Shown here one piece after another: positions 23,981 to 59,392 of a DNA stretch of 64,000 nucleotides (within the stretch, counting starts at the first letter, position 1; the number at the start of each line of letters is the position of its first letter). Made by a program: the position numbers and the translations under genes. Source of the DNA: Camelus dromedarius. Taxonomy: Eukaryota. Location of the stretch: assembly GCF_036321535.1 (NCBI RefSeq), contig NC_087455.1:1302001-1366000 (forward strand), read 5' to 3'. The notes below the pieces were generated by a model. It was given only the letters and a program-made list of their open reading frames with translations. It was not told where the DNA came from and did not search any database.

Positions 23981-24049
23981 AGATTAAAAAAAAAAAAAAA
24001 AGAAAGAAAGAAAGAAAGAAAAAGAAAGAAAAAGAAAGAAAAGAAAAAT

Positions 24050-24972: not shown

Positions 24973-25194
24973 GGACCTTTCCAAAAAACTTGGGGCTCTA
25001 AGCCCGCTTGGAGGGAAAACGCGGAGGCCCCAGAACGCGTCCCCACGTGCTTCCGCAGAGCGCCGTCGGGGGGCTGGCTGTCCGCGCATGTGGGCGCACT
25101 GCTGGGGCCGCCGCCAGCCACGCCAGGAGCGAGGTGCACGCGGGGGTCAGGCTCCAACGATGAGTCAGAGCCTTTCGAGTCACGGCCCCAGACC

Positions 25195-35100: not shown

Positions 35101-35347
35101 TCCTCCATCCTGACCCTCCCCTTGCTCACGGACACTCTCTAGTCCACCCTGTGGTCACCAGCTGCACTGGCAGTGGAGATCTCAGCTGGCTAAGATGATG
35201 AAAACTCCATTCAGACCCTTACCATGACCCCAATTCAGTGAAGCCTCCTCCTCTCTAAGGCAGAGAAGACTGATACTCACAGGCTTCAGGATCAATGTCA
35301 CCGTGTGGCCACCCCATGAAGAGGAGGAAGGCAAAGAGGAGCTTCAT
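30474..35347 (-). CDS. GML: Glycosylphosphatidylinositol-anchored molecule-like protein (LU domain), 156 aa; coding exons 35281-35347, 34556-34663, 30474-30769
   Basis: Exons of 67+108+296=471 nt with phase-1 GT/AG junctions translate to MKLLFAFLLFMGWPHGDIDPEAWTYNLKCYDCWVTNTFYCSNIRVCPYEIRRCLTISSRYDERELFVYKNCTNNCTFVHPSQQPPEAPRRKYFRSNSFYFVHCCNSMTCNEGGISNLERDILPEMTVEEELEGTVRLGQSTFFLSFASIAVSNTLT. It has 10 Cys and GML-typical motifs (NIRVCPY.IRRC, KNCTNNCTFV), and sits tail-to-tail with CYP11B as in human. Confidence 0.92.
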
Positions 35348-39503: not shown

Positions 39504-39560
39504 CTGAGGGCTAGCAGGAGCCTGCAGGACTGCCCCCCCACCCCGCCTGCGCCCCGCCCA
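39504..39560 (-). other. GML: Putative non-coding exon 1 of GML (donor CCTCAG|GTCAGT, exon 3' end 39504; start approximate)
   Basis: Coding exon 2 begins only 2 nt before the ATG (acceptor at 35350-35351), so an upstream exon is required. This donor is at the edge of the nearest CpG island and is conserved in a diverged paralogous copy at 59430. Confidence 0.55.
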
Positions 39561-40432
39561 GACAGCTGGACGCTTCCCCCGCCCCCCTCCGGCCCCGGCC
39601 CCGGCCCCGGCCCCACTGCCCCACGGCCCCCACCCCCACCGGCTCCCACCCCCGCACGCCCGAGTCCCGCCCAGGCTTTCTGGAACCTTCCCCCACCCCC
39701 TCTGTCCCCTCCCGCCATCCCCGCCCCCACCCTGTTTCCCGCCCAGGCTTTCTGGAACCTTCCCCGTCCCCCAACCCCTATCCTGCCCAATCCTCTGGAC
39801 GCTTCCCCTGCACCCCTCAGTCCCCATCCCCCACCGGCTCCCACCCCCGCACGCCCGAGTCCCGCCCAGGCTTTCTGGAACCTTCCCCCACCCCCTCTGT
39901 CCCCTCCCGCCATCCCCGCCCCCACCCTGTTTCCCGCCCAGGCTTTCTGGAACCTTCCTCCGTCCCCCTGCCCGACCCAGTTCCCCGCCCCGAGCTTTGT
40001 GACCTTCCGCGGACACGACCTCGAGGGCCCGCACAGCCGGTGTGGCGCGGGGAGCCGCAGGTGGGCGCGGGGAGGCCGGGCGGGCTCCAGGCCCCGTTCT
40101 CTCAGCCGCAGGTCGGACGGGCGTCTCCCGACAGGCTTCGCGCGGCTTCCGGAAGGTTCGGCCTGGTCTCGGGGCGGCCCCGTTCCCCAGAGGCGCTTCC
40201 CTGAAGGGCCCTGCTGCAGGGGAGGTTCCAGAAGGTCTGGGCGGGAAACGGGGTTGGGGGGGACGGTGGGAGGGGACAGAGGGGGTGGGGGAAGAGTCCA
40301 GAGGTCTGGGCGGGACAGGGGTGGGGGAGGGGGAAGACAGTCCCAGAAGGTCTGGGCAGGACATGGGGAGAAGGGGAACTCCAGAGAGAACCTCTGGGGG
40401 AGGTTCCAGAAAGCCTGGGCAGGACTGGGGCA
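39561..40432. repeat. GC-rich minisatellite blocks in opposite orientations (39561-39960 C-rich; 40219-40432 G-rich) around a CpG core; unit core CCCGCCCAGGCTTTCTGGAACCTTCC
   Basis: The repeated core is directly visible, with a 195-bp higher-order period (39636 vs 39831). Confidence 0.9.
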
Positions 40433-42561
40433 GTGGAGAGGACTTCAGAGTGACCACGCCAAATGCTGGACAGGATACAAAGAAACCAGGTTGTTCCCGC
40501 ATTGCTGGTTACATGAAAAAATGGCGCAGCAGGTGTGTAGAACAGAGTGCAAGTTCCTTTAAAAACTGCTTATGCAATTACCATGAGATTCCCAAATCCA
40601 CTTCTGGGTGATTTCCCCAGAGACACTGAAACTGTGTCCACACAGAACACATCCATGGATGTTTACGGCAGCTTTATCTGAAATGCTCGGGAGAAAAACC
40701 CAGATGTCCTACAGTAGTGTGCAAACCACAGCACTCTCTCACGGAGGTGAGCTGCTCAGCAGGAAAAGCAAAAGTATTGCTGGACGTCCTGAGTTGACTG
40801 AATGCCTAGGGACTCATTCTTAATGACAAATGACACTCCACCAAGGTTACATAACACACTGTTCGTTTTGTATACCATTATAGGGATGACAAAGTTGCAG
40901 AAACGGACACCAAATCCATATCGCAGGGTCGCACTGTCTGGGGATCTGGGCGGGAAAGAGATTGATGCGTCCTTAGGAGGGATGATTGTGGGGCCAACAC
41001 CATTCTCTCCCCTCGCTTGGGGAGTGACACTAACCTAGTTAGTTGTGATACTATAGTTTTGCAAGATAGTGTCAGTGGGAATGACTGAGGAAAGCACACA
41101 CAGGATCTTTCTGTGTTTTGTGCCCATATATTTGAATATACAAACATCTCAAAGTAAAACGTTTAATGGAAAAGAAATTTTTAAACAACCAGATCATTAC
41201 TTGCATTACTATTTAAATGGCTACAGTTAGGAACCCAAGATTTTTGGGATAGACAAAAGATAGTACGTTCTCTTTACTAGAGGCGTGCTTTAAAATAAGG
41301 ACATGACAAGATTGAAAAAAATATATAGAAAAGGGTCTACAATTTGAATGCTGCCCAAGGGACTCTTACACACACACTGAGGCTAAGTAAACATTAACAC
41401 AAGAGCGTTACTTATGTGAAGAACCACATTTTGTAGAGGTGAAGGAATAAAATAGATACCACAGTCATCACAATCTAAATCCACACGTACCTGATAGCAC
41501 AGGATGAAAATACCTTGGTAGAACTTAGGTTCTAGGTACTGTGGGCAAAACAAAAACAAAAACTAAAACAGTCGCATAGTTGTCATAAACTCATCTGTCT
41601 CCATGGATTCTGGACCCTGAAGCAAGGAGACAGAATTTATTGTAGCCCTGGACTACGGTCACCATCGTTCCTCTGAAAAGACCAGACAGTAAATGTCTTC
41701 AGCTTCAGAGGCTGTCCAGTCTCTGTCACTCCTACAAAACGTTCTCTTTGTGGGGCTGGAACCAGACACAGAGGATGCGTAACCGTACGATCGTCCCTAT
41801 GATCCAGCAAAGCTTCCGTCACCGACACGTTGGTGGCCTGGGCTGGTCCCACAGGCTCTTGTCTGCCAGCCCCTGCTACAGACGGTCTGAGCAACACTTG
41901 CCCAGCGTCGCCAGCCCTGGCACACACCTCGTGAGACTCGCACGTCCCCCACCCCACCCCCAAGACAAGGACAAGAGTACTCGCTGCAGCACCCCCTGGG
42001 CTCGATAAAACCCAGAAGCAGCCCCGTGTCCATCCGCAGTGAAGTGAGGTGTGTCCATCGGTGGAAAGTACGCAACCGCGAGAGGGAGCGCCGCGCGGCC
42101 TCGCCAGGGGCAGGGCCGGACCGCACAGAGCCCCGCAGAGAAGAGGCGGCAGACGCAAAAACGAGCAGCGCGGGTGGATTTCCTTTCCGTTGATTCAAAA
42201 GCAGGCCGAGTCACGTGGAGGCTCGGAAAGCCGGGCGCTTCCTCCTCGCCTCTGGCCGTGGCGCGTCTCGTGCCTGAGTCGAGGAACGGAGGGAGGAATG
42301 CGGGGCTTTCCACCCAGGCCTGCTTCTCGAGCAGGATGCTGCTCTGCGGTTACGTGCGCTTCGGGAGGGTCCGTGAAGCTGTCGCCCTGCGATTGTGCGC
42401 TTTTCTGTAGAATGTGGGTCTTTAGCAAGCTCTTTGGCACAAACGGAAAATCAAGGAAAGCAGGTGCCTGGGGCGCAGCCGTCAGCACTTTCTGAGGCAG
42501 GTGAGGCCGCCCGAGTGGGTAGGTGCCCCCGGTGAGCTCCGGGAGGAGGTGTCTGTGTGAG
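39607..42561. repeat. Inverted segmental duplication, left arm (partner 56587-59345)
   Basis: Mirror ORFs with coordinate sum 99147 (e.g. 41637..42158- and 56989..57510+; 40042..40611+ and 58536..59105-). The left arm carries one extra 195-bp VNTR macro-unit. Confidence 0.95.
39677..40160. promoter_or_regulatory. Cluster of five perfect three-pentamer heat-shock elements (39677-39691, 39749-39763, 39872-39886, 39944-39958, 40146-40160)
   Basis: tTTCt-gGAAc-cTTCc occurs four times and cTTCc-gGAAg-gTTCg once, matching the HSF consensus. Function is not shown. Confidence 0.6.
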
Positions 42562-43445
42562 ACTGTGAGGCCCCAGGTTCCCCAACATGACTCCTGCATG
42601 AAAGTAGCAAATTTCTCACATAAAGTCTCAAACGGAAATTTCTGATGCGCCAGTAGCTCTTCCTCCTCCAGTGGTTGGAGATGTCATGTCCACGGTCTCC
42701 AGGCCAAGTAGCAAAGGGGAAGGAACACAGAGGGTCAGGACCATCAAAGACACACGTGGCCTCTGCCCTGGTTCTGCCGGATAAACTGGGCTGCAGGAGC
42801 CCGCACACTGCAGTCTGTGGGTATAGGAAGTGCCTGGCATGAGTTGATACACAGCCAAACTTGTCTGCCATATTTAGCATCTTCAAAAGACTAGAAGTAC
42901 TGTCTTTTAGTGAAAAAAACCCACTCCAGACCATGACCTTTGAAGTCAGAGGCTAAAGTAAATACATTGAGACCACTGATCTGACAACGTCTCTTCCCAC
43001 AGAAACTTCTTCACTGAAAGTTTAAGTAATGACCACTAGAAAAAGTGGAATTTATCTCTAGGAGAGTTTTCAATGTAGAAAAGAATAGTGAGCCCAGGAA
43101 ACATACACGTGTGAGTGAATGAAAACAACAAAATTCAAATCTACGAATGGAGTGTAAGAAACAAGAACGTTAATTAAAATGGCTGTAAAGGTTCTGCAGT
43201 TTTTGTGTGTTCGCTGAGACCTGGGCAGCGTGGCCCACACTGACGCACCAGCACACCAAGGGCAGGCTGTGACTCCCGGCTGCATCCTGGTCCAAGGGCA
43301 GCTCGTACACCACTTGGGGCTGAGGCCCACTGTACATCTCAGCCTTCCGAGGGGCCTTGGCAGTTCTGACTCACTGGCCCAACTGAATGAGGAGGGTGAG
43401 GAGCAGGGAATGAGTTAAATCAAAGTAATATTAGAAATGACAGTC

Positions 43446-44017
43446 ATATTCTTCACAATAGCCAAGTCATGGAAGCCACCTGAATGTCCACTGACAGATG
43501 ACTGGTTAAAGAAGCTGTGGTGTATTTATATACAATGGAACATATACTCAGCCACGAAAAGGAATGAAATAATGCCATTTTTAGCAACATGGATCTACAG
43601 ACGATCATACTAAGTGAAGTAAGTCAGAAAAAATAAAGTGTCATGTGATATCATTTACAGGAGGAATCTAAAAAAGTGACAGAAACGAACTTATTTACAA
43701 AACAGAAAGAGATGCACACACATAAAAAACAAACTTGTGGTCACCAGGGGGGAATGGAGGGAGGAAGTGATAAATTGGGAGTTTGGGATTGGCAGATACT
43801 AACTACTGTGTACAAAATAGATAAACAAGGTTCTCCTGTGCAGCACAGGGAACTATATTCAGTGGCTTGTAACCTGTAAGGAAAAGAATATGGGAAGAAA
43901 TACATATATGTATAAGTGAATCATTATGCTGTACACCAGAAATTAACATGTTGTAAGTCAACTAAACTTCAATTCTTAAAAAAATCAGAAAACAAAGAAA
44001 CAACAACAAAAAAAAAA
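43446..44017 (+). mobile_element. 5'-truncated L1 3' end with A-rich tail, 0.9-1.5 kb upstream of the CYP11B ATG
   Basis: Cetartiodactyl-type L1 3' UTR (CAGCACAGGGAACTATATTCAGT...GCTGTACACCAGAAATTAAC) ending in poly(A). Confidence 0.85.
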
Positions 44018-44556
44018 ACGCTCTGGGGACCCCCCCGCCTGAGGGCTGGCTCCAGCTATGTGCCTGCTGGAAAGGGTCCCTGGGAGAATGGGGAGCCCAT
44101 GCCCACCCCCATCACAGCCTTGATGGGTTCCTCTGGGAGGACAAGTTCTGGGGAGAGAGGAAGACGGGGCCCTGAACAGAGGCCCCAAGTCGGGCAGGCA
44201 GAGACCTGTCATTGTCTACCTGAGGAGCAGCTCACAGGCCACCCCACCAATGACCCCATCTCCTGGGTGTTCACTGCCCCTTAGCTGGACCAGCAAGGCC
44301 AGATACACAGGGCCTCAGCCACATCGGTGCCCTGGCTGCCCCAGTGCCACCCAAGTGGTGTCTGGATTCCCCTGACTGGCCCCAAGGCACCGAAACCCCC
44401 CCACCAGGAGGGGTGCTTGCTAGCTCCTGACCTCCCCGCCCTGCACCCAGCACAAGGCCTGGGAAGAGCAGACAAGACACACAGGGCGTCAGGAAATTGG
44501 GGCAAAGCCCTCCCCACTGCTTCCTCCTCTGGTCCTTGTAGAAAAGATGAAAATAT

Positions 44557-44869
44557 CCAAGGTCCCCATTCATCCCTTGATAAGATAAGGCACCTCTCCA
44601 TCTTGCTGCTTTCCCTCACGGGAGAGAGGAGGGAGGCCTCCTTACCCCACCCCGACTCTATTTGGCCCCATCCCGACCCACCCCTGCTCTCAGCAGCCAC
44701 CCACCGGCGGGTTGCGTCACTGCCAGACGAGGCAGCCGGCCATCTCTTTCATCCTCCCGCTGGACGCCTCCAGCCCTGACCGCTGCCCTGGGTTTCCTGG
44801 TCTGGCCAGGGACAGCTTCTCCTCTGACGTGATCGAGGCGGCCGGTCCAGCAAACTAGGCGAGATAAAA
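44557..44869 (+). promoter_or_regulatory. CYP11B1: CYP11B proximal promoter: Ad4/SF-1 site CCAAGGTC (44557-44564), Ad5-like element (44768-44787), Ad1/CRE TGACGTGA (44825-44832), GATAAAA TATA variant (44863-44869)
   Basis: The motifs are visible in the order and at about the spacing known for CYP11B promoters (Ad4 about -340, Ad5 about -130, CRE about -75 from the ATG). Confidence 0.8.
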
Positions 44870-44902
44870 GGACCGGGCCGAAAGGGGTGAGGGCGCACCA
44901 GC

Positions 44903-47900
44903 ATGGCGTTCCGGGCAAAGACCGCAGTGTGGAGGGCAGGGCCTTGGCTGTCCCTGCACAGGGCACGCACACTGGGCACCAGAGCTGCTCAGGCCCCCAA
45001 GAAGGTGCTGCCCTTCGAAGCCATACCCCAGTGTCCTGGCAACAAGTGGATGCGGGCGCTGCAGATCTGGAGGGAGCACGGCTCCGAGAACATGCACCTG
45101 GACATGCATCAGACCTTCCAGGAGCTGGGACCCATTTTCAGGTAAAGCTCTCCCTGAACACCTCAGCGAGAACACCCTGACTGGTGGTGGTCCCGCTGGC
45201 CGCGGAGTCCTGGCTGGGCTCAGGGTTCTGCCACATCCAGTCCTGGCGGGGAGTCTGGGGAATGGGGGAAGGGGCAGGTAGGGGGCTCCGCAGGGCTGGT
45301 CTGTGCCTTCAACCCTGGAGACCGTGGCTCTCCGTGGAAACAGAGCACTGTGCAGCTTGCTGCTGGGAGGACAGAACGCAGACACCAGAGGAGGAGAGGC
45401 TTCAGTGAGACTGCAGGAGGGACTGCCTGGTCTGAGCCAGCTGCAGGCCGTCTCTGCAGTGGGGCCCAAGGGAGGCCACATCCCCAGAGCAGGGCCTCGA
45501 GCTTTGTCCCACAGGTATGACGTGGGAGGGAGGCGCATGGTATTCGTGATGCTGCCCGAAGACGTGGCGAGGCTGCAGCAGGCGGAGAGCTTTCACCCTC
45601 AGCGGATGCTCGTGGAGCCCTGGCTGGCCTACCGACAGCACCGTGGCCTCAAACGTGGCGTGTTCTTGCTGTGAGGGCGGGTTGGGGTGCAGGGGGTGGG
45701 CAGTGGGAAGCGTGGATGCAGAGAGGAGGTGAGACAGGAGAGGCTCCAGCGCACACCCGCCTGGGGCCTCTCTAGGCAGGTGGAGAGAGGGTGACCGCCA
45801 GCTCCCGATGAGTGCCAGTCCCGAGGGGCTCAGGGGTGCCCCGGGCCGGGGAGGGGAGCAGGGGGCCTGGTGGGGACTCGAGCCAGGCCCTGTCCTCCAG
45901 GGAGAGGAAGAAGGCTAGGACTGCCATTCGGGAGCCCTCTCCAGCCTCCACAGGCCCCGAGGGGCTCGTGCACAGGTGGGACTTCTCGCCTTCTGCAGGT
46001 CAGACCCCCTGTAGGCCTGCAGGGAGCCCCCCCCACCCCCGTGGGCTCCGGGCTCTGTCCGGAGCCTGCTAGGAGAGCCCTGCTCTGATTCTCGCCCCGG
46101 AGGAGCGGAGGCTCTGTAGGGAGAGCAGCAGGTGGAACGGGCACGGGGCAGCGCACCCAAGCTGGGGATGAAGGTCTCCAGGGGCTGCTCCCGCTCCGGA
46201 CTGTGGGTGAGCGTCGGAAAAGCCTCCACCCCCAGAGAGGGAGACGTGGGTGCCAGGGGAGGGGCCTGCCAGTTTGCACAAACAGTGGGGCCCGGCAGCA
46301 GCCCGGGCCGGGGCTCCCGTCTCAGCCTGGGCGAAGTGCACGAGGCCCCCCTGAGGAAAGAGGTGCTGCCAAGGCCCACGCGTGGGCAGCCGGCCCCCCG
46401 AGAACCAGCAGGCGGCTTGCCGCCCCGCCCGCCTCCCGTCGTGGGGGGGCACAGGGCTGGGGCCAGCTGCTGGCTCCGGATGCCCTGACGCTCTGCGCTC
46501 TGCTCTACAGAAACGGGCCCAAGTGGCGCTCCGACCGGCTGCAGCTGAATCCGGACGTGCTGTCACTGCAGGCCGTGCAGAAGTTCGCGCCCCTGGTGGA
46601 CGAGGTGGCCAGGGACTTCTCCCAAACCCTGAGGGCGAGGGTGGTGCAGAACGCCCGGGGGAGCCTGACCCTGGACATCAAGCCCAGCATCTTCTGCTAC
46701 ACCATCGAAGGTGTGGGCGTGCAGCGGGGGTGCCGCTCAGAGGCTCGGAGTGGGCCGGGGCTAGGGCAGGGAGGGCTAGGGGAGGCGGCCAGGAGGCCCT
46801 GGGCTGCCTCAGGCTCAGGAACTGCCTCCTCCCTGCAGCCAGCAACTTAGTCCTTTATGGAGAGCGGCTGGGCCTCCTCGGCCACAACCCGAATGCTGAC
46901 AGCCTGAACTTCATCAGCGCGCTGGAGGCCATGTTCAAGTCCACAGTGCAGCTCATGTTCCTGCCCAGGAGCCTGTCACGCTGGACAAGCACCAGCATAT
47001 GGAAGGAGCACTTCGAGGCCTGGGACTGTATCTTCCAGTATGGTGAGGGCCGAGGATCCAGCAGCACTGGGACCAGGGACCCCAGGGCCCCCTCCACTCA
47101 CCACAGTCCAGGAGAGCAGAGGCCACGTGCCAGGGCTGGTGGCTTCTTTCTGGTCCCTGAGAGAGTGGGCAGGGAGGCTGGACTAGGCTGACCCTAAGAA
47201 CTGGGGGTGGCACACGGAGACCTGGGGCTTCTGAGGGCTGAAGGGCAGGAGGGTGACAAAGAGAAGTGCCCCCAGCCCCAGGCCCAGGGCCTCTGTCTCT
47301 CTGGGCCCCACAGCCAACAAAGCCATCCAGAGACTCTATCAGGAGCTGACCCTTGGCCGCCCGTGGCGCTACAGTGGCGTCGTGGCAGAGCTGCTCATGC
47401 ATGCAGACATGACCCTGGATGCCATCAAGGCCAACTCCATCGACCTCACTGCCGGGAGCGTGGACACGGTCAGGCCAGCAGCCAGCCCTTCCCGTAGAAC
47501 CGGGAGCCCTCCCCTTCCCATGCCAGACGGCTCGACCATGCCCCCTCCCCAGTCTGTGCCTCCAAAATGGCTAGACTTAGGCCTCAGCTTCTGAACTGAG
47601 AGGGGGAACATGGGCGCCAAGCCTCAGAGGGAAGGAGTTTGCAGCTCCTCCCGTGGGAAACCGTGCTCCAGGCAGAGTGCAGAGTGGATGAGGCCCAGGG
47701 GCATGCAGCTCCACAGACCCTGTGTGGATAATCTGGGTCCTGAGCCAACGGGGAAGGACCAAGGTGCAGCAGAGAGCTGCACGGGGAGACCCCCCAGTGA
47801 CAGATGACACTTAGCTCTCACCAAAGATCCTTTGGAGGGGACAGGCTGACGGGCAGGGCAGCATGGGGCTCCGGCTGGGGCGGGGGAGCAGGCGGCGGTA

Positions 47901-50184
47901 CAGTGCGGCGGGCAGGGCGGGCTCCAGGGCGCAGGGCCGACGAACCTTCCTGCCTCTAGACAGAGCCTTCATCTGCCAGCGTCTCTGAGGGCCTGCTCTG
48001 GGCCACGCACCCAGGATTCAGAGCAGAGGCACAGACCCATTGTGGAGAAACTCCCTGAGCAGGGGGTCTGTGATGCAGCCACCAGCTGAAAGAACCCAGG
48101 GGAGGGCATGTGCCTTCAGGGGGCAGCTCTGAGAGGAGGACTTCCTGGAGAAGGAGGGCTTTCCGTGGAATGCAGAAGAACCACACACAAGTCAGATGGG
48201 CCACGAAGAGGGGGCTGGGAGTGCAGCAGCCCGGGGCCAGCAACAGCAGACAGTGAAGAAAGGCCCTGAGGCTGAGTGGAGCCGACAGGGGCAGACAGGG
48301 TCAGGACCCCTGGCAGTAGGGGCCTTGGGCACCAGGCCTGTATCCAAGGCTGGAGGAAGCCAGTGCAGGGAGTGCCTCGGTCAGATTTCTGCTCCCTCAC
48401 GGGCCACAGGGCAGAGCACGGACTAAAGCTCAGGGTGCAGCCGAGAGGCTGTATCTGCCCATCAGAAGATGCCAGGGGCGTGCGTGTCGCCTTGGGGACG
48501 GCGTTCAGGAAAGACTTAGCTTCCCTCCCAGATTTTGGCCGGGGCTGGCAGACACCTCTCCCTGCACAGGGAAGTGATCCAGGAGGAGGAAAGGGGTAGG
48601 GTCTGGGACCTGCCTTTGGATGCCCAGGGGAGAAGCCCCACTGGGAGCAGTTAGACCTCGGGCTCCAGAACCCTCCCCCCTGAGTAGCTGGCAAGAGTGA
48701 GCCCCTCGTGGACACAGAGGAAGGTGAGAACCAGGCCCTGAAGTGGCTGGAGGAGGCCTGCATCTTCATTTGAGACTGGGGACACCTTCCCCGAGGGATT
48801 CAGGGGAAGTCGATGAGGTGGGTGGTTTTAGGCTCTTGAGGTCTCAGGTCTCTGGGCACGCAGGTCCCCTGTCCCCAGGGGTGGCCATCTTTCTGGGGAG
48901 GGTGCCCTGGGGGTGGAGGGGTGTGGCCCGTGCCAAGGTCCGAGCCCTGCTCCCCTGGCTCCTGCAGACAGCCTTTCCCTTGTTGATGACTCTCTTTGAG
49001 TTGGCTCGGAACCCGGATGTGCAGCAGGCCGTTCGCCAGGAGAGCCTGGTGGCTGAGGCCAGGATCTCTGAAAATCCCCAGAGGGCAACCACGGAGCTGC
49101 CACTGCTAAGGGCTGCCCTCAGGGAGACCTTGAGGTAGGCGTGGTAGACCTTGGCTGCCCCAGATGCCCTGGCCCCAGTGTCTGGAGAGCCCACTCCCTA
49201 GGGCTTGAGGACAGATCCTGGGGCTGACAAGCAGCTTTGCCCGAGGACACATCCCCCTGTGCCTTCCCTTCCTCCCCTAAAAGGATGGGGTGCTTCTTCC
49301 TCTGGGATGCCACCTCAATGTCCTGGGCCGTCCTCCATCCCGTCCCCACTGGCCCGGGGCTGCTCAGGCTGGGGGAGCTTTGGCTGAGCTCCAGAGCTGC
49401 CAGGAAGCAGCTGCTCAGGAGCGGGGCTTCCCAGTGCCAGAAGGGACCTGTGAGGGCAGTGGCCAGCTGCCCTTGGCCCATGAGTGCTGGGCCGGGAAGG
49501 CTGCAGAAGGGAAGTGAGGGGCCCTTTCACAGCGGAGGACCTTGTTGGACATCCCTATGCACAGGCTGTATCCCGTGGGTATCACCGTGGAGCGACGGGT
49601 GAGCTCAGACTTGGTGCTGCAGAACTACCACATCCCGGCTGGGGTGAGTGAGGCCCCAGAACCCTTCTGGCTGATACTCAGCCCGTTTGACCTTGGCCCA
49701 CGGGGCGGCTGACCCTAGCCCCTCCCCACCTGACTGCAGACTTTGGTGAAGGTGCTACTCTACTCCCTGGGTCGAAATGCAGCCGTGTTCGCCACGCCCG
49801 AGCGCTACCATCCCCAGCGCTGGCTGGACCACCAGGACTCTGGCGTCAGGTTCCCACACCTGGCCTTTGGCTTTGGTGTGCGCCAGTGCCTGGGGCGGCG
49901 CCTGGCAGAGGTAGAGATGCTGCTCCTGATGCACCATGTGAGTGGGCCGGGCTGGGGCCTGGGCGGGCAGCCCACTTGCAGACCCCAGGCTTCTGCTCCT
50001 GGGACGCCCAGCCACAGGGTCTTGGAAGGCGGGAGAGGCTGGGCCAGGCAGAACCCTGCCTCTGTCCTAGGTGCTGAAAAACTTCCTGGTGGAGTCACTG
50101 GTGCAAGAGGACATCAAGATGGTCTACCGCTTCATATTGATGCCCTCCACCCTCCCACTCCTTACCTTCCGGGCCATCAACTAG
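44903..50184 (+). CDS. CYP11B1: Mitochondrial cytochrome P450 11B (steroid 11-beta-hydroxylase, probably bifunctional), 503 aa; exons 44903-45141, 45515-45670, 46511-46710, 46839-47042, 47314-47468, 48968-49134, 49565-49643, 49740-49937, 50071-50184
   Basis: Exon sizes 239/156/200/204/155/167/79/198/114 total 1512 nt, the canonical CYP11B structure, all with GT-AG introns and an open frame. Motifs include the I-helix AGSVDTTA, K-helix ETLR and heme motif [10 protein letters not shown] (Cys450), plus an N-terminal mitochondrial presequence. Confidence 0.97.
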
Positions 50185-51706: not shown

Positions 51707-51712
51707 ATAAAT
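51707..51712 (+). terminator. CYP11B1: Probable CYP11B polyadenylation signal AATAAA (3' UTR about 1.5 kb)
   Basis: First AATAAA found downstream of the stop codon at 50184. Confidence 0.6.
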
Positions 51713-54329
51713 GGGGATTTCTTCTCCCACCACTAAAACGTTGCTCTTTACTTGTGGCCCTGCTCCATGGTGGGTGGGGGACGTGATGGCAGGAAGGGAA
51801 TGAAAACATAGCTAGCCTGCAGTGAAGGTGTGTCACTCTGCCAGGCTTGGCACACACGTTCCCTTGGTCTCCACAGCAGCCCTAAAAGGCAAACACTGTG
51901 ATCAGCCCCGATTTGCGGATAAGGAAACTGAGGCTTAGAGAATTTGTTTACCTGCCAAAGTCTCGCAGCCCGTCCAGGGCAGGGGTACCGCCTGAACCTA
52001 GGATGCCAATCCCCTCCCCCTGAAAAGGCCTGGGACTGGGAGTGGCCTTGCACACACCTGGGAAACAGCCTCCAATGTAAAGCATCTCTGGATGCTTTCA
52101 AGATTGTCTCCTGGTGTTCTGTGTGTCTTCAGTTTTACTGTTTCAAGTCTACACAGGGTCCTATTTGTTTATGCTGCTTGGAATTTCCTGTGCCTTTCCA
52201 GTGAGAGTGTCCATCTGGCTCTTTCTAAAAACCCTCTAGGTGATCTCGATAGCCTACTGTTTAACGGCCATAATTCTTACAGCTCTGCACTTCTTCCAGT
52301 GTGGAAGTAGTGTTGCCTTTAAGATACCTGATGCCAAGAACTGGAACATCTTCTCTGATCCATGTGCAGCTGGGGCCTGGTCTGAGGCTGTTGGCCCAAG
52401 GGCTATCATTTTCCCACAGCCACTTTTGTCTTACTTGCTCAGCCTGGGAGCTCCTCTTCGTCATGAGCACCAGACCTAGATCAGTGTCAGGGCACCTTGG
52501 TTCTCGGGAGGAAATGTGTGCCCTCCTCCGTCCCAGTGGTAGGAAGCTAAGCCCCTCATCCTCTCCCAGAGCTGTGGGACAGGAGGCGTCTGTGCTCCAT
52601 TTTCAGTGTTGCTGTAGTGTTCTGAAAGCCTCGCGTCCCTGTGGGGTTCCAACTGCAGTTTCTAACCTCATGTCCTGAGCAGCGCATCCTTCCCCCGAAG
52701 GAACTGGAACGACCGGGCCATTAGGCTACTTGACCCCCCTCCCCTGGCGGCCGCTGTCCTGGCTCCTGTGCTCCTTCTTGCCTGGTCCAGGTCCCTCCTT
52801 GTCTCAGGACCCTGAAGAGGTCCTGCCCTTTTCTGCCAGCCCAGAAATGCGTTTCTCGCATGTTTTTGATTATGTATAGTTAGTTGCTAGAGTGGAAGGA
52901 TTTTCAGAGAATCAGCCCATAACTTTGCTAGAACCTGTAGACATTCACTGGCGCCTTGAAGCAGAGTCAGTGTCTGGATGCTCTGTCTGTGGCTGCCCTG
53001 GGGGTGGACCGAACATCCTCTCGTTGTCGAGTCAAGTCTCCACAAAGTGGTTTTCAGCTCTCTTGCAGAAATGGTTGCCTACCGTGCAAGAGAGTTCCCA
53101 GAATTACTGGTTGGTGGCCTTATGCACTTGGGAGAATGCTGGACCATAGGAGGATTGCCTGCCAAAGTCGGAAGCAGCTAAGCACCCCACTTTCCTTCAT
53201 CACTCAGTGCTGTTTACCAGGACTGCCTACATGTCCGGCCTCACGCTGTGCGGCAGTGAGCAAGACAAGCCCTCGCCCTCAGAGGGAGTGCACCCCGTGA
53301 GTCTAAACTATAGGAGTGGGGATTTATTGCAAAAATCTTGGTAACGGCAAGAGTGGGCACAATATAATTTTCTTTCAACAAAGGGACTGTTCACCTGAAG
53401 TGTGTCCGTTCAGTAGAACACTTAAGCATCTGAAAGAGAAATAAATAAGGCACCTCGCTAAGTGTCTGTACAGAACGATGTTCACCACGTAGTCACTAGA
53501 AAGGCAGGACACAGAGGTGCACCAGTTGTATGTATGGGCGCACACGGTCTGGCAAAGTAGACGTGGCGAGCCACCGACCTGGTTTCTGCCGGGGCGGGGG
53601 AGGTGACGCTCCTGGGGCTTGCCTGGTCACCACAGAAAAGTCCCAAAGGAGCAAGGCTAACCCCTTGCGGCCGGAAGGAAAGGCACTCAGGAGTCAGCAG
53701 CCATCCGCCTGGGGAGCAGTGAGCCCCAATAACGGGAAGCCAGGAGCGCACAGGGGGCCCGGGGGCTGCAGTGGAGCCCAGCCCAGGCCCTGGCCTTGGT
53801 CCGGGAGGAGAACAGGGCGTCCTCACAGTCCCACAGGGATGGGCCGGCACCCAGAGAGGCAGGAAGGGTGTGTCCGCACTAAGGCAATGGTCAGGGTGTG
53901 GCAGCAGAGGCCACACAGACACCCTCTAGGGACTTCAGCCCTGTGGCCACCACTCTGTCCACATCAGCGTAGGTTTCAGCGAGGGTGACCAACACTCTCT
54001 TCTAGAGGCCTGGGAGGCCATGTGGAGGGGCTGAGGTCAGGCCAAGGTGGGACTGGGCCAGCAAAGTGGAAGGGGTGACGGGGTGCCAGGCAAGGTGAGG
54101 AGAGGGCAGACATGGAGTGGAGAACAGGGTGCGGAAGGTGAATGCAAATGCCACCCTCGCAGGGGAGCACCACCGCAAGGATGTCCCCCCAGCTGGCTGA
54201 CACGTTGGGGGTGGGGAGGGACCGAGAGCCCCTCACCAGGCATTTGGCATGGCCCCTGCATGCTCCAGGGCCAACTCGGGCCACGCCCTCCCCTATTTCC
54301 TCCAAGAATCCTCATCAAGTGACTAGCAA

Positions 54330-55300
54330 ACCACATCCAGCAGCATGTAAAAGGAATTCTACATTCCGGACCAGTGGAATTCATCCCAGGAGTAAAGGTT
54401 GGCTTAATACCCCCAAGTCAAGGACTTGCCATCGGACAATAACCCCGTCCGTAGCATACAGAGGAAAATCACACTCCCACCTTCACAGACGCAGAAAGAG
54501 CATTTAACAAAAGTCAGCGCTGCTGCCGTGGTAAGAAATACTCCACAAACCGGGAGTAGAAGGGACTTTCTTCAACTGATAAAGGACATCCATTGAAAGC
54601 CCACAGCTAACACCATTCTGAAGAGGGAAGGACTGGCTGCTGTCCTAAGATTAGGAACAAGCATGCCTGCTCTGACCGCTCCCATTCACCATGGTCCTGG
54701 AGGTTCTAGCCAGAGCAGTTAGGCTCTCAGAATGAGCGGAAGTCATCCAAGTTGGAACGGAAGGAGGAAAACTCTCTCTATTCACAGATCATATGATCTT
54801 GTCTAGAAAACGACCTAAGGAAATCATTTTAAAAGTACTGTGCCTAATGGAGTCGTCCAGCAATATCTCAAGATACAAGTACATGATCCAAAAGCAGTCG
54901 TACTTCTCTTCATTGGTAATGCCAAATCCGAAAATACAATTAAGAAACCCATTCCATTTGCAAGAGCATCAAAAAGAGTGTAACACCTAGGAATTAAAAG
55001 ATGTCCAAAATTTATACTCAGAAAACCACAAAGCACCGTGGAAAGAAATTAAAGAAGAGCTACAGAGTTGGAAAGCATCCTGCACCCACGAATCAGAAGA
55101 TGCTGTCTTGCTCCCGTGGCGACACTCCTCATACAGGTCTCCAGACTCGACGCAACCCCTATGAAGACTCCAGCGGACTCCTTCGTAGAAAGTGCCAGGC
55201 TGACTCTAAAATTCACAGGGAACGCAAGGAAACTAGAAAAGTGGTCCTGGACCAGTCTTCCCGCGGGCATGTAGACTATGCCCTGGGGCTGTTTCGTTTT
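54330..55300 (+). mobile_element. Old L1 ORF2 relic; its 3' part is duplicated at 29718-30180
   Basis: Decayed RT-region sequence. The deletion breakpoint of copy 1 falls inside it. Confidence 0.65.
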
Positions 55301-57247
55301 TGACTAAAATACTCAATCTCTGTTCCCTCAAGTGGCAATATACTTTTGTCCGTGTGTGAGTGGTGCCTAACAAGGAAAACAACGGATCAGAGCTAACACC
55401 ACAAAGAAATCCGAGTACACAATACCCAAACCATCATGCTCTTTATTTCTCCCTCCAAACAAGCCCTAAATGGGTGACTTGCCAACGGGGGACCCCGTGG
55501 GTCACTGTCTCTGGCTCACAAAAGAGCAAAGGACAGCCAACTGGCTCTGGGGAATGGGGAGATGGTAAGACCCTCCAAAGGCAGCTTCTCATGTCAGTGT
55601 ATTGCTGACCGCAATGGAGGCAAAGCTCAGGAAAAAGGTTGACTGCCCTAATCGCACAGTTCCTTCCAATTCCTCCTCAACTGTCATTTCGGGGAGGATG
55701 TCCCTCTCAAGATTACTAATACCCCCCTCGTTGCAGGTCATACTATTACAGCAATGAACAAAATAGAAAGAGTTAGAACGAAAGTATTTTCTCCTGGGGG
55801 CTTCAGGAGGCTGCTGAGAGGGGTGCACAAATGTGCAGTTGTTTGTGCAGTTCTTGTAAACGAATAATTCACGTTCATCGTAACCTAAAAAAGTAAAGAT
55901 GACAATCATTGATTTCTCGTTTTCTGCTTGCAAATATCAAAGCACGTTTATCTTAACTAGCTCCATCCCTCACGTGTTGTTACACTGCCTGAAATTCTTG
56001 ATTGAGAAGACAATCCAAGTCCAATAAGGGTTCGGTGACTCCATGACACCTTCTCCTGGAGATGTTGTCTCGCTACACTGCCACCTCATCTCTGTATCTG
56101 GCCTCCCTATGAAGCTTCCTGGTGCCTGATCACGGAGCTGTACAAACGCATCGTCCTGTTCACCATTTGCTCTAAGAATTCTAGGGATCCGGAAGCAGAA
56201 CGGAGCCCAGGAAACATGTTTTGCTGATGTCCCAAGGTCACACAGACCCTCCAAGCAGAGGGCCCTTGTCATCTGGCCTCCAGCTGACTTTCTGCAGCTG
56301 GCCTCACCCTGCTAGAACGGGCTCCCGCCGCACCCCTCTGCCTGCCGTTCCCCGCCCCCGGCCCAGCACGGAGGCTGACGCACATTCACACCCACCTGCT
56401 CCCCAGTGCAGCCCTGGTGCCCCGTCCCAAGTACAGTCCCACTGGGACGCCTGTGAGCGCCTTCGCTGGAGGACTGGCCAGTGCCCTCGACCAGCCAAAG
56501 CCCTGTTCAGGCTCCACCTGAGGCCTGGCTCGAGAGTCCCTGAGTTAAGCTGCCGCGGCCTCACTCACCAGTTCTGTGCCCCTGGCCTCGCACAGACACC
56601 TCCTCCCGGAGCTCACGGGGGCACCTACCCACTCGGGCGGCCTCGCCTGCCTCAGAAAGTGCTGACGGCTGCGCCCCAGGCACCTGCTTTCCTTGATTTT
56701 CCGTTTGTGCCAAAGAGCTTGCTAAAGACCCACATTCTACAGAAAAGCGCACAATCGCAGGGCGACAGCTTCACGGACCCTCCCGAAGCGCACGTAACCG
56801 CAGAGCAGCATCCTGCTCGAGAAGCAGGCCTGGGTGGAAAGCCCCGCATTCCTCCCTCCGTTCCTCGACTCAGGCACGAGACGCGCCACGGCCAGAGGCG
56901 AGGAGGAAGCGCCCGGCTTTCCGAGCCTCCACGTGACTCGGCCTGCTTTTGAATCAACGGAAAGGAAATCCACCCGCGCTGCTCGTTTTTGCGTCTGCCG
57001 CCTCTTCTCTGCGGGGCTCTGTGCGGTCCGGCCCTGCCCCTGGCGAGGCCGCGCGGCGCTCCCTCTCGCGGTTGCGTACTTTCCACCGATGGACACACCT
57101 CACTTCACTGCGGATGGACACGGGGCTGCTTCTGGGTTTTATCGAGCCCAGGGGGTGCTGCAGCGAGTACTCTTGTCCTTGTCTTGGGGGTGGGGTGGGG
57201 GACGTGCGAGTCTCACGAGGTGTGTGCCAGGGCTGGCGACGCTGGGC
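54833..57247 (+). repeat. Direct segmental duplication, copy 2 (partner 29718-32133)
   Basis: The match starts at AAGTACTGTGCC and ends at GGCGACGCTGGGC. Confidence 0.95.
55442..55884 (-). pseudogene. Orphan copy of the GML last exon (coding part 55589-55884) with intact acceptor and polyA signal (55442-55447)
   Basis: Identical translation to 30474-30769 at offset 25115. The upstream intron is cut at 57247 and no matching exon 3 or exon 2 is found to the right. Confidence 0.88.
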
Positions 57248-59345
57248 AAGTGTTGCTCAGACCGTCTGTAGCAGGGGCTGGCAGACAAGAGCCTGTGGGA
57301 CCAGCCCAGGCCACCAACGTGTCGGTGACGGAAGCTTTGCTGGATCATAGGGACGATCGTACGGTTACGCATCCTCTGTGTCTGGTTCCAGCCCCACAAA
57401 GAGAACGTTTTGTAGGAGTGACAGAGACTGGACAGCCTCTGAAGCTGAAGACATTTACTGTCTGGTCTTTTCAGAGGAACGATGGTGACCGTAGTCCAGG
57501 GCTACAATAAATTCTGTCTCCTTGCTTCAGGGTCCAGAATCCATGGAGACAGATGAGTTTATGACAACTATGCGACTGTTTTAGTTTTTGTTTTTGTTTT
57601 GCCCACAGTACCTAGAACCTAAGTTCTACCAAGGTATTTTCATCCTGTGCTATCAGGTACGTGTGGATTTAGATTGTGATGACTGTGGTATCTATTTTAT
57701 TCCTTCACCTCTACAAAATGTGGTTCTTCACATAAGTAACGCTCTTGTGTTAATGTTTACTTAGCCTCAGTGTGTGTGTAAGAGTCCCTTGGGCAGCATT
57801 CAAATTGTAGACCCTTTTCTATATATTTTTTTCAATCTTGTCATGTCCTTATTTTAAAGCACGCCTCTAGTAAAGAGAACGTACTATCTTTTGTCTATCC
57901 CAAAAATCTTGGGTTCCTAACTGTAGCCATTTAAATAGTAATGCAAGTAATGATCTGGTTGTTTAAAAATTTCTTTTCCATTAAACGTTTTACTTTGAGA
58001 TGTTTGTATATTCAAATATATGGGCACAAAACACAGAAAGATCCTGTGTGTGCTTTCCTCAGTCATTCCCACTGACACTATCTTGCAAAACTATAGTATC
58101 ACAACTAACTAGGTTAGTGTCACTCCCCAAGCGAGGGGAGAGAATGGTGTTGGCCCCACAATCATCCCTCCTAAGGACGCATCAATCTCTTTCCCGCCCA
58201 GATCCCCAGACAGTGCGACCCTGCGATATGGATTTGGTGTCCGTTTCTGCAACTTTGTCATCCCTATAATGGTATACAAAACGAACAGTGTGTTATGTAA
58301 CCTTGGTGGAGTGTCATTTGTCATTAAGAATGAGTCCCTAGGCATTCAGTCAACTCAGGACGTCCAGCAATACTTTTGCTTTTCCTGCTGAGCAGCTCAC
58401 CTCCGTGAGAGAGTGCTGTGGTTTGCACACTACTGTAGGACATCTGGGTTTTTCTCCCGAGCATTTCAGATAAAGCTGCCGTAAACATCCATGGATGTGT
58501 TCTGTGTGGACACAGTTTCAGTGTCTCTGGGGAAATCACCCAGAAGTGGATTTGGGAATCTCATGGTAATTGCATAAGCAGTTTTTAAAGGAACTTGCAC
58601 TCTGTTCTACACACCTGCTGCGCCATTTTTTCATGTAACCAGCAATGCGGGAACAACCTGGTTTCTTTGTATCCTGTCCAGCATTTGGCGTGGTCACTCT
58701 GAAGTCCTCTCCACTGCCCCAGTCCTGCCCAGGCTTTCTGGAACCTCCCCCAGAGGTTCTCTCTGGAGTTCCCCTTCTCCCCATGTCCTGCCCAGACCTT
58801 CTGGGACTGTCTTCCCCCTCCCCCACCCCTGTCCCGCCCAGACCTCTGGACTCTTCCCCCACCCCCTCTGTCCCCTCCCACCGTCCCCCCCAACCCCGTT
58901 TCCCGCCCAGACCTTCTGGAACCTCCCCTGCAGCAGGGCCCTTCAGGGAAGCGCCTCTGGGGAACGGGGCCGCCCCGAGACCAGGCCGAACCTTCCGGAA
59001 GCCGCGCGAAGCCTGTCGGGAGACGCCCGTCCGACCTGCGGCTGAGAGAACGGGGCCTGGAGCCCGCCCGGCCTCCCCGCGCCCACCTGCGGCTCCCCGC
59101 GCCACACCGGCTGTGCGGGCCCTCGAGGTCGTGTCCGCGGAAGGTCACAAAGCTCGGGGCGGGGAACTGGGTCGGGCAGGGGGACGGAGGAAGGTTCCAG
59201 AAAGCCTGGGCGGGAAACAGGGTGGGGGCGGGGATGGCGGGAGGGGACAGAGGGGGTGGGGGAAGGTTCCAGAAAGCCTGGGCGGGACTCGGGCGTGCGG
59301 GGGTGGGAGCCGGTGGGGGTGGGGGCCGTGGGGCAGTGGGGCCGG
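56587..59345. repeat. Inverted segmental duplication, right arm (partner 39607-42561)
   Basis: Reverse complement of the left arm apart from the VNTR copy number and three small differences at 56590-56645. Confidence 0.95.
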
Positions 59346-59392
59346 TGGCGGGGACGGAGGAAGGTTCCAGAAGGTCTGGGCAGGACTCAGGG
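58715..59392. repeat. Mirror copy of the minisatellite/CpG cassette with four perfect HSEs (58987-59001, 59189-59203, 59261-59275, 59359-59373)
   Basis: Reverse complement of the left cassette. The last HSE lies outside the near-identical arm. Confidence 0.85.

What the first reader, a model, noticed from the sequence alone, without database searches (positions are those of the whole stretch)
39607..59345. The only intact CYP11B gene is enclosed by 2.8-3.0 kb near-identical inverted repeats, predicting an inversion polymorphism
Seen: 39607-42561 and 56587-59345 are reverse complements differing only in a 195-bp VNTR unit and three small changes, around a 14-kb spacer containing the CYP11B promoter, all nine exons, the polyA site and the orphan GML exon. 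CYP11B currently keeps the human-like orientation relative to LY6E and GML. Established: kb-scale inverted repeats above 99% identity mediate recurrent NAHR inversions and gene conversion. Inference: CYP11B may flip orientation between haplotypes, changing which HSE cassette and GML promoter lies upstream. Caveat: the assembly has N-gaps, so gap-filling from a paralogue could have created or homogenised one arm.
Basis: partly seen in the sequence, partly recalled or inferred. Interest (0 to 1): 0.7.

Follow-up and report, generated by a model that had tools for sequence, protein, structure and literature searches.

The report
Inverted repeats bracketing camel CYP11B
The dromedary's single intact steroid 11-beta-hydroxylase gene really does sit between two mirror-image 2.8-kb repeats, which are kept identical by copying between them and have probably helped turn the gene around during camelid evolution, but no camel assembly shows the flipped form today.

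Summary
Arms 39595-42561 and 56587-59357 are reverse complements, with a 2,674-bp core that has no differences. The 14,025-bp spacer holds an intact nine-exon CYP11B gene (503 aa) and an orphan copy of the last GML exon.

The repeat is not an assembly artefact:
- Contigs from four public read sets give depths near 1:2:3 for the flank, the two-copy part and a three-copy part.
- Three independent Camelus assemblies (C. bactrianus, C. ferus, a second dromedary) carry both arms in the same contexts.

A 662-bp segment X is present three times. A 2.4-kb direct repeat also brackets CYP11B.

The arms evolve in concert. All nine lineage-specific changes sit in both arms of each species, and arm-to-arm differences are 0-2 against 4-8 between species.

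Alpaca has one long arm, a 604-bp X/X' inverted repeat around CYP11B, and the flank R on the promoter side. Relative to R, CYP11B therefore has the opposite orientation in alpaca and camels. That supports inversion as an evolutionary event.

A segregating polymorphism is untested. All four Camelus assemblies agree in orientation. Because the arms are mirror images, a flip would leave the first 5 kb upstream of CYP11B almost unchanged.

The parts
39595..42561 (.). Left arm (Y'X'). The outer part holds the HSE minisatellite. The inner 662 bp (41900-42561) is an inverted copy of X.
   Evidence: read contigs; also present in L004, L005, L006, L008
56587..59357 (.). Right arm (X2 Y), the reverse complement of the left arm.
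   Evidence: a contig from run X19 runs from it into the right outer flank
39828..42501 (.). Core with zero differences from the reverse complement of 56646-59319 (2,674 bp).
39439..39594 (.). Older, diverged outward extension of the repeat, 72% identical to the reverse complement of 59340-59496. Both copies match a single region in each of two whales.
59358..59496 (.). Right-hand partner of the 72% extension, at the start of single-copy flank R.
31472..32133 (+). Third copy of X, inside GML intron 3. It is 100% identical to the left-arm X' in inverted orientation, 9,766 bp away.
   Evidence: read contigs start at 32104 and run into 32134 onward in 4 runs; the X|U junction is collinear in sperm whale
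29718..31471 (+). Block 'a' (GML last-exon block), the copy used by the intact GML frame. Its left end abuts the truncated CYP11B remnant.
54833..56586 (+). Block 'a2', a direct repeat of 'a' (with X: 2,416 bp at 99.83%, period 25,115 bp). Its left boundary lies inside a continuous L1 ORF2 fragment, so this copy is in its original place.
44903..50184 (+). CYP11B coding region. Exons: 44903-45141, 45515-45670, 46511-46710, 46839-47042, 47314-47468, 48968-49134, 49565-49643, 49740-49937, 50071-50184. It encodes 503 aa, identical to the protein named CYP11B1 of C. dromedarius / C. ferus (P0321).
29269..29713 (+). CYP11B remnant (exon 8 to mid exon 9), 88% identical to 49674-50141 including a 23-bp gap.
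30477..35347 (-). GML, an intact 156-aa frame. Exons: 35347-35281, 34663-34556, 30769-30477, all with GT-AG splice sites.
55592..55884 (-). Orphan copy of the GML last exon, identical to 30477-30769. It lies at the position where alpaca has its working GML 3' end.
39619..40159 (.). HSE cassette of the left arm. Perfect trimeric heat-shock elements start at 39678, 39750, 39873, 39945 and 40147. There are two 195-bp units.
58988..59372 (.). HSE cassette of the right arm, with elements starting at 58988, 59190, 59262 and 59360. The last lies outside the near-identical part.
54745..54906 (+). L1 ORF2 fragment (matches residues 688-741 of human ORF2p) that spans the a2 boundary at 54833.
60182..60319 (+). 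Cysteine-patterned Ly6-like exon in flank R. C. ferus annotations place a Ly6/uPAR-domain gene on this strand.

Best explanation
This is a genuine and old pair of inverted segmental duplications in the dromedary genome. The window is identical to assembly GCA_036321535.1. Each arm consists of Y joined to X. Y is a heat-shock-element-rich, GC-rich 5' module that faces outward toward a Ly6-family gene: GML on the left and a Ly6 gene in flank R on the right. X is a 662-bp piece of GML intron 3. The arms bracket CYP11B and a stranded copy of the last GML exon.

The arms stay near-identical because they repeatedly copy sequence from one another (gene conversion), not because they are young. The same holds for a 2.4-kb direct repeat (a-X) that also brackets CYP11B.

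Recombination between inverted copies has already rearranged the locus in camelid history. Alpaca and Camelus differ in which single-copy flank lies on the promoter side of CYP11B. Two flips between repeats that exist in Camelus would convert one arrangement into the other.

Shown: structure, copy number, junctions, concerted evolution, and the alpaca-camel difference. Inferred: the recombination mechanism, the order of events, and any present-day polymorphism.
For: Reality of the repeat:
- Contig depths for flank: Y: X are 48:76:101, 25:51:77, 41:76:131 and 10:14:28 in four runs.
- Contigs begin in X at 32104 and run 7.5 kb to 39574.
- The unitig graph forks exactly at 42561 in all four runs.
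- One X19 contig reaches the right outer flank.
- Both arms appear in the same contexts in C. bactrianus L004, C. ferus L005/L008 and dromedary CamDro3 L006.
- In CamDro3 the left Y' is a noisy stretch (87-95% identity) bounded at 39467 and 41902, which looks like raw long-read fill spanning that arm.

Concerted evolution:
- In the shared 2,218 bp, arm-to-arm mismatches are 2 (dromedary), 0 (bactrianus) and 0 (ferus), against 4-8 between species.
- All nine lineage-specific changes are present in both arms.
- Unique flanks differ by 0.45-0.51% between dromedary and Bactrian. About 10-11 arm differences are therefore expected without exchange (P(0) about 1e-5 to 5e-5).
- The derived T at 42502 is shared by the left arm and the third X copy, and is absent in run X2.
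- A 2.8-kb segment is present at a2 in bactrianus, ferus and alpaca but missing from both a and a2 in dromedary. The left 406 bp of a and a2 are 94.7% identical in ferus but 100% identical in dromedary.

Age:
- A 72% identical extension lies beyond the arms.
- Alpaca has its own 604-bp X'/X inverted repeat at 99.3% identity around CYP11B.

Inversion:
- Alpaca L003 reads R' Y' X' P J a X U, whereas the window reads a X U Y' X' P J a X Y R.
Against: - Only 25 kb of alpaca sequence was available, so the two-flip derivation predicts sequence to the right of U in alpaca that I could not see.
- Whales share the Camelus adjacency of the GML 5' flank with the CYP11B 5' flank. The polarity of change (alpaca derived) rests on two outgroup loci only.
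- Zero differences in the core could be exaggerated by consensus polishing of repeats in assemblies. Logan contigs also pop variant bubbles, so paralogue-specific variants in the core cannot be strictly excluded.
- No contig was laid on 42562-43400 in any run. The tool says records are filtered, so the left inner junction was not seen directly in reads, only in assemblies and as a graph fork.
- In run X1 the depth ratio is lower (1:1.6:2.1), which I cannot explain.
Confidence: 0.78

Rival explanations
1. One reading: the spacer currently exists in both orientations among living dromedaries as an NAHR inversion polymorphism, with consequences for CYP11B regulation.
For: - The arm size, identity and spacer fit known human polymorphic inversions (PMC3961182).
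- Frequent exchange between the arms is shown.
- Orientation differs between alpaca and Camelus.
Against: - All four Camelus assemblies have the same orientation.
- Contigs and short reads cannot test this, because a flip creates no new junction shorter than the arm.
- By symmetry the 2.3 kb plus 2.8 kb upstream of the ATG stay the same after a flip, so a proximal regulatory effect is unlikely.
Confidence: 0.2
2. Assembly artefact: one arm was created or homogenised by gap filling or a haplotig mis-join.
For: - The window has two N gaps.
- The core is 100% identical, with differences only at the edges, which is the pattern repeat polishing can produce.
- In the older CamDro3 assembly the left Y' was indeed a filled gap.
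Against: - The N gaps are more than 11 kb from the arms.
- Depth is about 2x for Y and 3x for X in independent read sets.
- The graph fork, the flank-spanning contigs and three other assemblies from two further species show the same structure.
- Species-specific substitutions are present in both arms of each species.
Confidence: 0.03
3. A young duplication: the arms are identical simply because one was copied from the other very recently, with no ongoing exchange.
For: Zero differences over 2,674 bp.
Against: - The structure is shared by dromedary, wild Bactrian and domestic Bactrian camels, whose unique flanks differ by about 0.5%. Yet each species has its own substitutions in both arms.
- The X'/X part is already present in alpaca.
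- The repeat continues outward at 72% identity.
Confidence: 0.04

Closest known systems
[quoted passage not shown] 2014, PMC3961182). From my own knowledge, also the Xq28 FLNA-EMD inversion between 11-kb repeats.
   Same: - Kilobase-scale, highly identical inverted repeats flank a gene-containing spacer of 5-226 kb.
- Breakpoints lie in the most identical stretch.
- Orientation differs between related species.
- The repeats exchange sequence by gene conversion.
   Different: - Both orientations have not been seen within a species here.
- The arms are at the short end of the range (2.75-2.95 kb).
- The system has a third X copy and a parallel direct repeat.
Arm-to-arm gene conversion in large palindromes of primate sex chromosomes (my own knowledge, not checked here).
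   Same: Paralogous arms within a species are more alike than orthologous arms between species. Identity drops at the arm boundaries.
   Different: - The arms here are far shorter and the spacer is relatively long (14 kb).
- The locus is autosomal-type.
- The arms carry promoter-like modules rather than testis gene families.
Saccharomyces chromosome XIV 24-kb flip/flop region (PMC9731477; title and abstract only).
   Same: An invertible gene-containing segment is bounded by repeats that are recurrently homogenised, and it is conserved across species.
   Different: It is a yeast locus, and both orientations are documented within species. Here only a between-genus difference is seen.
Human CYP11B1/CYP11B2 unequal crossing-over, which gives the chimeric gene of glucocorticoid-remediable aldosteronism (my own knowledge).
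   Same: It is the same gene family and chromosomal neighbourhood, and rearrangement occurs by recombination between paralogous sequence.
   Different: In humans the repeats are the two genes themselves in direct orientation. Camels have one intact gene, and the repeats are non-coding flanks.

Membership tests
Inverted segmental duplication able to mediate NAHR inversion | Two copies in inverted orientation on one chromosome, at least ~1.6 kb long and highly identical | tested here: met
   2,740 bp at 99.85% identity, with a core of 2,674 bp at 100% and a 14,025-bp spacer. Size range taken from PMC3961182.
Inverted segmental duplication able to mediate NAHR inversion | Both copies exist in the organism, not only in one assembly | tested here: met
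   Depth is about 2x and 3x in read-derived contigs of 4 runs. Both arms are present in L004, L005, L006 and L008.
Inverted segmental duplication able to mediate NAHR inversion | The spacer is found in both orientations within a species (polymorphism) | tested here: inconclusive
   Four Camelus assemblies all show one orientation. The sample is far too small, and short contigs cannot detect a flip.
Inverted segmental duplication able to mediate NAHR inversion | Orientation relative to unique flanks differs between related species, with breakpoints in the repeat | tested here: met
   In alpaca L003, R' Y' X' abuts the CYP11B 5' side and X abuts U. In Camelus, X Y R lies on the 3' side.
Repeats under concerted evolution (inter-copy gene conversion) | Paralogues within a species are more alike than orthologues between species, and lineage-specific changes are present in both copies | tested here: met
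   0-2 arm-to-arm mismatches against 4-8 between species, with 9 of 9 lineage-specific changes in both arms. The dromedary-specific 2.8-kb deletion is in both direct copies.
False duplication (assembly artefact) | Single-copy read depth and no reads supporting one copy's junctions | tested here: not met
   Depth ratios are near 1:2:3. There is a fork at 42561 and a junction at 32133|32134, and contigs reach the right outer flank.

The most novel reading that the evidence does not exclude
The CYP11B cassette is a recurrently flipping switch in camelids. Recombination between the arms, and between X copies, repeatedly swaps which Ly6 paralogue (GML or the gene in R) lies head-to-head with the only 11-beta-hydroxylase/aldosterone-synthase gene. 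Both orientations still segregate in dromedaries, and the parallel 2.4-kb direct repeat generates deletion or duplication alleles of CYP11B. Any of these could contribute to variation in adrenal steroid output.
Probability: 0.12. Interest if true: 0.7.

Novelty: new member of a known kind. Interest (0 to 1): 0.45.

Why it matters
CYP11B makes cortisol and aldosterone, and the window holds a single intact copy. Any structural instability around it is therefore relevant to camel salt, water and stress physiology and to breeding.

This locus carries three recombination substrates at once:
- The 2.8-kb arms, which can flip CYP11B.
- The X/X' pair, which could flip the 5' half of GML.
- The 2.4-kb direct repeat, which could delete or duplicate a 25-kb unit containing CYP11B.

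It is also a compact example of concerted evolution, with a between-genus orientation difference that is easy to test with long reads. For genome builders, it marks a place where older camel assemblies had a gap and where gene models merge Ly6 genes across CYP11B. The kind of structure is well known from human and yeast genomes, so this is a new case rather than a new principle.

Tried and rejected
- My first idea was that the right arm holds GML exons 1-3 and the 'orphan' exon belongs to an intact minus-strand GML there. tblastn with GML proteins rejected this: the signal-peptide and first LU exons occur once, at 35.3 and 34.6 kb.
- I first dismissed sperm-whale matches to 43.2-44.4 kb as L1 noise. 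I revised this after gray whale L007 showed the same collinear order.
- A three-step staggered-break inversion path reproduces all the copies on paper. I dropped it as the preferred history because it does not explain the 72% homology that continues beyond the arms, nor the alpaca and whale adjacencies.
- P0327 ('CYP11B1-like', 88% identical) is not a second gene. It maps onto the window's own exons.
The 120-bp query had all 12 words in at least 12 runs, but it cannot say whether a junction word was among them.
- Read laying put no contig on 42562-43400. The tool filters records, so I treat this as no evidence.
- A profile search with an alignment of P0068 plus exon pieces returned nothing, probably because of the length window.
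- P0044 and P0325 are not on record.
- Rfam found nothing in 29000-64000.
- Pfam found nothing in arm ORFs or L1 pieces.
- Six loose-end sequences from the read contigs match none of the fetched loci.
- For L008, I did not list or use alignments that reach below window position 29000, so the parts matching the window's N gaps were left alone. No N was filled.
Full report
**1. What is in the sequence**

The window has only two N runs, 24117-24317 and 27728-27937.

The repeat finder and a self-BLAST show that 39822-42561 is the reverse complement of 56587-59324. The match is 2,740 bp at 99.85% identity. It continues outward as 39595-39772 against 59357-59179 at 97.8%. The left arm carries one extra ~195-bp unit.

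The core 39828-42501 equals the reverse complement of 56646-59319 exactly over 2,674 bp. All differences lie at the edges: 39817-39827 on the outer side, and 42502, 42531 and 42558 within the last 60 bp on the inner side. Beyond the near-identical part, the repeat goes on for about 150 bp at 72% identity (39439-39594 against 59340-59496). The spacer is 14,025 bp.

**2. Genes**

CYP11B lies on the plus strand:
- It has nine exons with GT-AG boundaries from 44903 to 50184 and an open frame of 503 aa.
- Pieces match Pfam p450 in the expected order. The exon 8 piece matches human CYP11B2/B1 structures at E = 1e-27.
- The protein is identical to P0321, which its sources name cytochrome P450 11B1 of Camelus dromedarius and C. 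ferus.

Locus L002 (GCA_036321535.1, CM070329.1) is 100% identical to window 34903-60184. The window is therefore that dromedary assembly.

A short CYP11B remnant (exon 8 to mid exon 9) sits at 29269-29713.

For GML I ran tblastn with GML proteins found:
- The signal-peptide exon and the first Ly6-domain exon each occur once, at 35347-35281 and 34663-34556 on the minus strand.
- The last exon occurs twice, at 30769-30477 and 55884-55592.
- An intact 156-aa frame uses the upstream copy.
- The arms contain no GML coding exon.

**3. The repeat is part of a larger system**

I name the segments as follows:

| Segment | Coordinates |
|---|---|
| a | 29718-31471 |
| X | 31472-32133 |
| U | 32134-39594 |
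| Y' | 39595-41899 |
| X' | 41900-42561 |
| P-J (CYP11B and downstream) | 42562-54832 |
| a2 | 54833-56586 |
| X2 | 56587-57247 |
| Y | 57248-59357 |
| R | 59358 onward |

The order in the window is: remnant, a, X, U, Y', X', P-J, a2, X2, Y, R.

- a-X and a2-X2 are direct repeats: 2,416 bp at 99.83% identity, with a period of 25,115 bp.
- X is present three times. The third copy and the left-arm copy are 100% identical in inverted orientation, 9,766 bp apart.
- The boundary of a2 at 54833 lies inside a continuous L1 ORF2 fragment, so a2 is in its original place.
- The left end of a is joined to the truncated CYP11B remnant, so that junction is derived.

**4. Is it real?**

I laid Logan contigs from four runs on 38600-43400. 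All four runs carry dromedary-type arms, under two organism labels.

| Run | Flank depth | Y depth | X depth |
|---|---|---|---|
| X1 | 48 | 76 | 101 |
| X2 | 25 | 51 | 77 |
| X5 | 41 | 76 | 131 |
| X19 | 10 | 14 | 28 |

These ratios are close to the 1:2:3 the assembly predicts. In X19 the Y contig also covers unique flank, which lowers its figure.

Further points from the contigs:
- In all four runs, contigs start with the last 30 bases of X at 32104 and run on into U. They reach 39539-39574 as one 7.4-7.5 kb contig in X2, X5 and X19, and as two contigs in X1. This confirms the X|U junction.
- The Y contig ends where X begins.
- The contig carrying the left-type variants ends exactly at 42561. 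Its only visible successor is the a-type flank. A fork at that base is what a second continuation into 42562 predicts.
- One X19 contig continues from Y into the right outer flank.
- X2 has a piece across the left-specific VNTR junction (39737-39857).
- No contig was laid on 42562-43400 in any run. The tool warns that records are filtered. The 0.93-0.96 word share for 38100-44060 shows that this sequence is present in the runs. I draw nothing from the hole.

Independent assemblies settle the point. All of these carry both arms in the same contexts and orientation:
- C. bactrianus L004.
- C. ferus L005.
- The older C. ferus scaffold L008.
- The second dromedary assembly CamDro3, L006.

In CamDro3 the left Y' is an indel-rich stretch of 87-95% identity. 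It is bounded at 39467 and 41902 and flanked by clean sequence. That looks like raw long-read gap fill, and it amounts to long-read support for that arm in its context.

**5. The arms exchange sequence**

I compared the 2,218 bp shared by all loci (40344-42561):
- Arm-to-arm mismatches are 2 (plus one indel) in the window, 0 in C. bactrianus and 0 in C. ferus.
- Arms of different species differ at 4-8 sites.
- All nine lineage-specific changes are present in both arms of the species concerned. This includes three changes private to C. ferus and one private to C. bactrianus.
- Unique flanks differ by 0.45-0.51% between dromedary and the Bactrian lineage. Arms evolving independently since that split should differ at about 10-11 sites (P of zero about 1e-5 to 5e-5).

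Other signs of exchange:
- The three inner differences in the window all lie in the last 60 bp (chance about 1e-5).
- The T at 42502 is derived, because every other sequence has C. It is shared by the left arm and the third X copy, and it is absent from run X2.

The direct repeat behaves the same way:
- A 2.8-kb segment is present at a2 in C. bactrianus, C. ferus and alpaca. It is missing from both a and a2 in the dromedary, and from the third copy in C. ferus.
- The leftmost 406 bp of a and a2 are 94.7% identical in C. ferus but identical in the dromedary, which has dromedary-specific bases in both copies.

One caveat applies. Consensus polishing of repeats and bubble popping in contigs could hide some paralogue-specific variants in the core.

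**6. Comparison with alpaca and whales**

Alpaca L003 (GCA_048564905.1) aligns as follows:
- 227-4900 to window 64000-59350, reversed.
- 4870-20305 to window 39741-55238, forward.
- 23088-25025 to a-X.
- 25024-25294 to window 32150-32420 (U).

Alpaca therefore reads R', Y', X', P-J, a, X, U:
- Within the 25 kb seen it has one long arm.
- Flank R lies on the promoter side of CYP11B.
- A 156-aa gene call lies tail-to-tail downstream, where camels have only the orphan exon.
- X'/X forms a 604-bp inverted repeat at 99.3% identity around CYP11B.

Relative to Y-R, the cassette P-J-a therefore has the opposite orientation in alpaca and in Camelus. The junctions specific to Camelus are remnant|a and U|Y'.

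Starting from the Camelus order, two flips give an order compatible with everything seen in alpaca. The first is between the arms. The second is between X and X' around U-Y'. The model predicts Y', X', an inverted orphan exon and the remnant to the right of U in alpaca. I could not check this.

Whale evidence:
- In gray whale L007, the end of U and HSE-like units lie upstream of CYP11B in the Camelus order. No X is found there.
- Sperm whale L001 agrees, and it shows a-X-U collinear across the X|U junction.
- Each whale has one region homologous to both the U end and the R start. The outer, 72% part of the repeat is therefore an old inverted duplication of a Ly6-gene 5' region.

The remnant has about 22 private changes in 445 bp. 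It keeps the ancestral base at five sites where Camelus CYP11B is derived. This suggests a duplication older than the camel-alpaca split.

**7. What the arms are**

- Each arm carries perfect trimeric heat-shock elements. They start at 39678, 39750, 39873, 39945 and 40147 on the left, and at 58988, 59190, 59262 and 59360 on the right.
- Each arm also carries an outward-facing ATG-initiated GC-rich frame, from 40502 on the minus strand (343 aa) and from 58645 on the plus strand (353 aa).
- C. ferus gene models start their coding ranges at exactly these mirrored positions. One runs into U and the other into R.
- The older C. ferus annotation has a Ly6/uPAR-domain gene on the plus strand toward R.

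I read the outer parts of the arms as paralogous 5' modules of two outward-facing Ly6 genes. This is inference: no RNA data were examined.

**8. Consequences**

- A flip between the arms creates no new junction shorter than an arm, so contigs and short reads cannot see it.
- By symmetry a flip leaves the same 2.3 kb of unique upstream sequence followed by X then Y. Only context beyond about 5 kb changes, that is, GML on one side or R on the other.
- The direct repeat a-X/a2-X2 predicts deletion or duplication of a 25.1-kb unit that contains the GML 5' exons, the left arm and CYP11B.
- The X/X' pair predicts a flip of U-Y' that would separate GML exons 2-3 from the adjacent exon 4.
- None of these alleles was observed.

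**9. Comparison with what is known**

In humans, 22 predicted inversions of 5.1-226 kb with inverted repeats of 1.6-24 kb were studied. [quoted passage not shown] The camel structure fits that class.

I found no paper on this locus in camelids. The library is limited and my searches were few, so this is weak evidence of novelty.

**10. Verdict**

- The artefact caveat is rejected.
- The inversion inference is supported as an evolutionary event and as a plausible mechanism.
- The inversion is unproven as a living polymorphism.
- Its claimed regulatory effect is weakened by the symmetry of the arms.

Noticed in passing
window 30123/30134 and 55238/55249; L004 20332-23125; L005 20334-23128; L003 20305-23088: A 2.8-kb TE-rich segment is present downstream of CYP11B in C. 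bactrianus, C. ferus and alpaca. It is absent at the same breakpoints from both copies of block a in the dromedary, and from the upstream copy in C. ferus.
   Followed up: yes
L001 15708-15998 and 22038-22328: Sperm whale has its own tandem duplication of the GML last exon (97 aa, 99% identical), plus inverted pieces of the GML intron further downstream. This locus appears prone to rearrangement in other cetartiodactyls too.
   Followed up: partly
L006 4601-7000 (= window 39467-41902): In the older dromedary assembly CamDro3, the left arm's Y' is an indel-rich stretch of 87-95% identity flanked by clean sequence. It looks like a gap closed with uncorrected long reads. Users of that assembly will see a false 93% arm identity.
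   Followed up: yes
window 40502-39474 (-) and 58645-59703 (+): Mirror-image ATG-initiated GC-rich open frames of 343 and 353 aa run outward through the HSE minisatellites. C. ferus gene models of 323 aa start their coding range exactly there. These may be annotation artefacts or real 5' exons.
   Followed up: partly
window 39707, 39902, 40281, 40503, 42452 (loose ends): Read contigs in several runs match short stretches of the arm and then continue into sequence found neither in the window nor in any fetched locus. One example continues for 255+ letters before the VNTR unit at 39902 or 39707. Either other loci share these motifs, or there is an unseen allele.
   Followed up: partly
window 38600-42561, run X1: Run X1, from a sample flagged as a possible source of the assembly, shows depth ratios of 1:1.6:2.1 instead of 1:2:3. 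The left-variant junction contig is only slightly deeper than the third-copy junction. The cause could be GC bias, noise, or heterozygosity for an arm.
   Followed up: no
L004 10001-16682; L005 10001-16684: C. bactrianus and C. ferus annotations list a 608-aa CYP11B1 isoform X1. It shares residues 1-467 with the 503-aa protein and then has a different 141-aa tail, extending the coding range about 1.4 kb downstream.
   Followed up: no
L003 1-25294 (-): The alpaca annotation contains a 375-aa Ly6-domain gene model that spans the whole CYP11B locus on the opposite strand. It seems to merge GML with the Ly6 gene of flank R.
   Followed up: no
L007 6193-6477 and 22823-23108; 6600-6930 and 23131-22831: In gray whale, CYP11B is bracketed by short repeats of about 290-330 bp: one direct pair at 94% identity and one inverted pair at 78%. 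They are unrelated to X and are probably SINE copies.
   Followed up: no
window 42000-42400 (and the copies in the other two X segments): X is GC-rich (63%) with CpG observed/expected near 1, so it resembles a CpG island. It is a piece of GML intron 3 that is now present three times.
   Followed up: no
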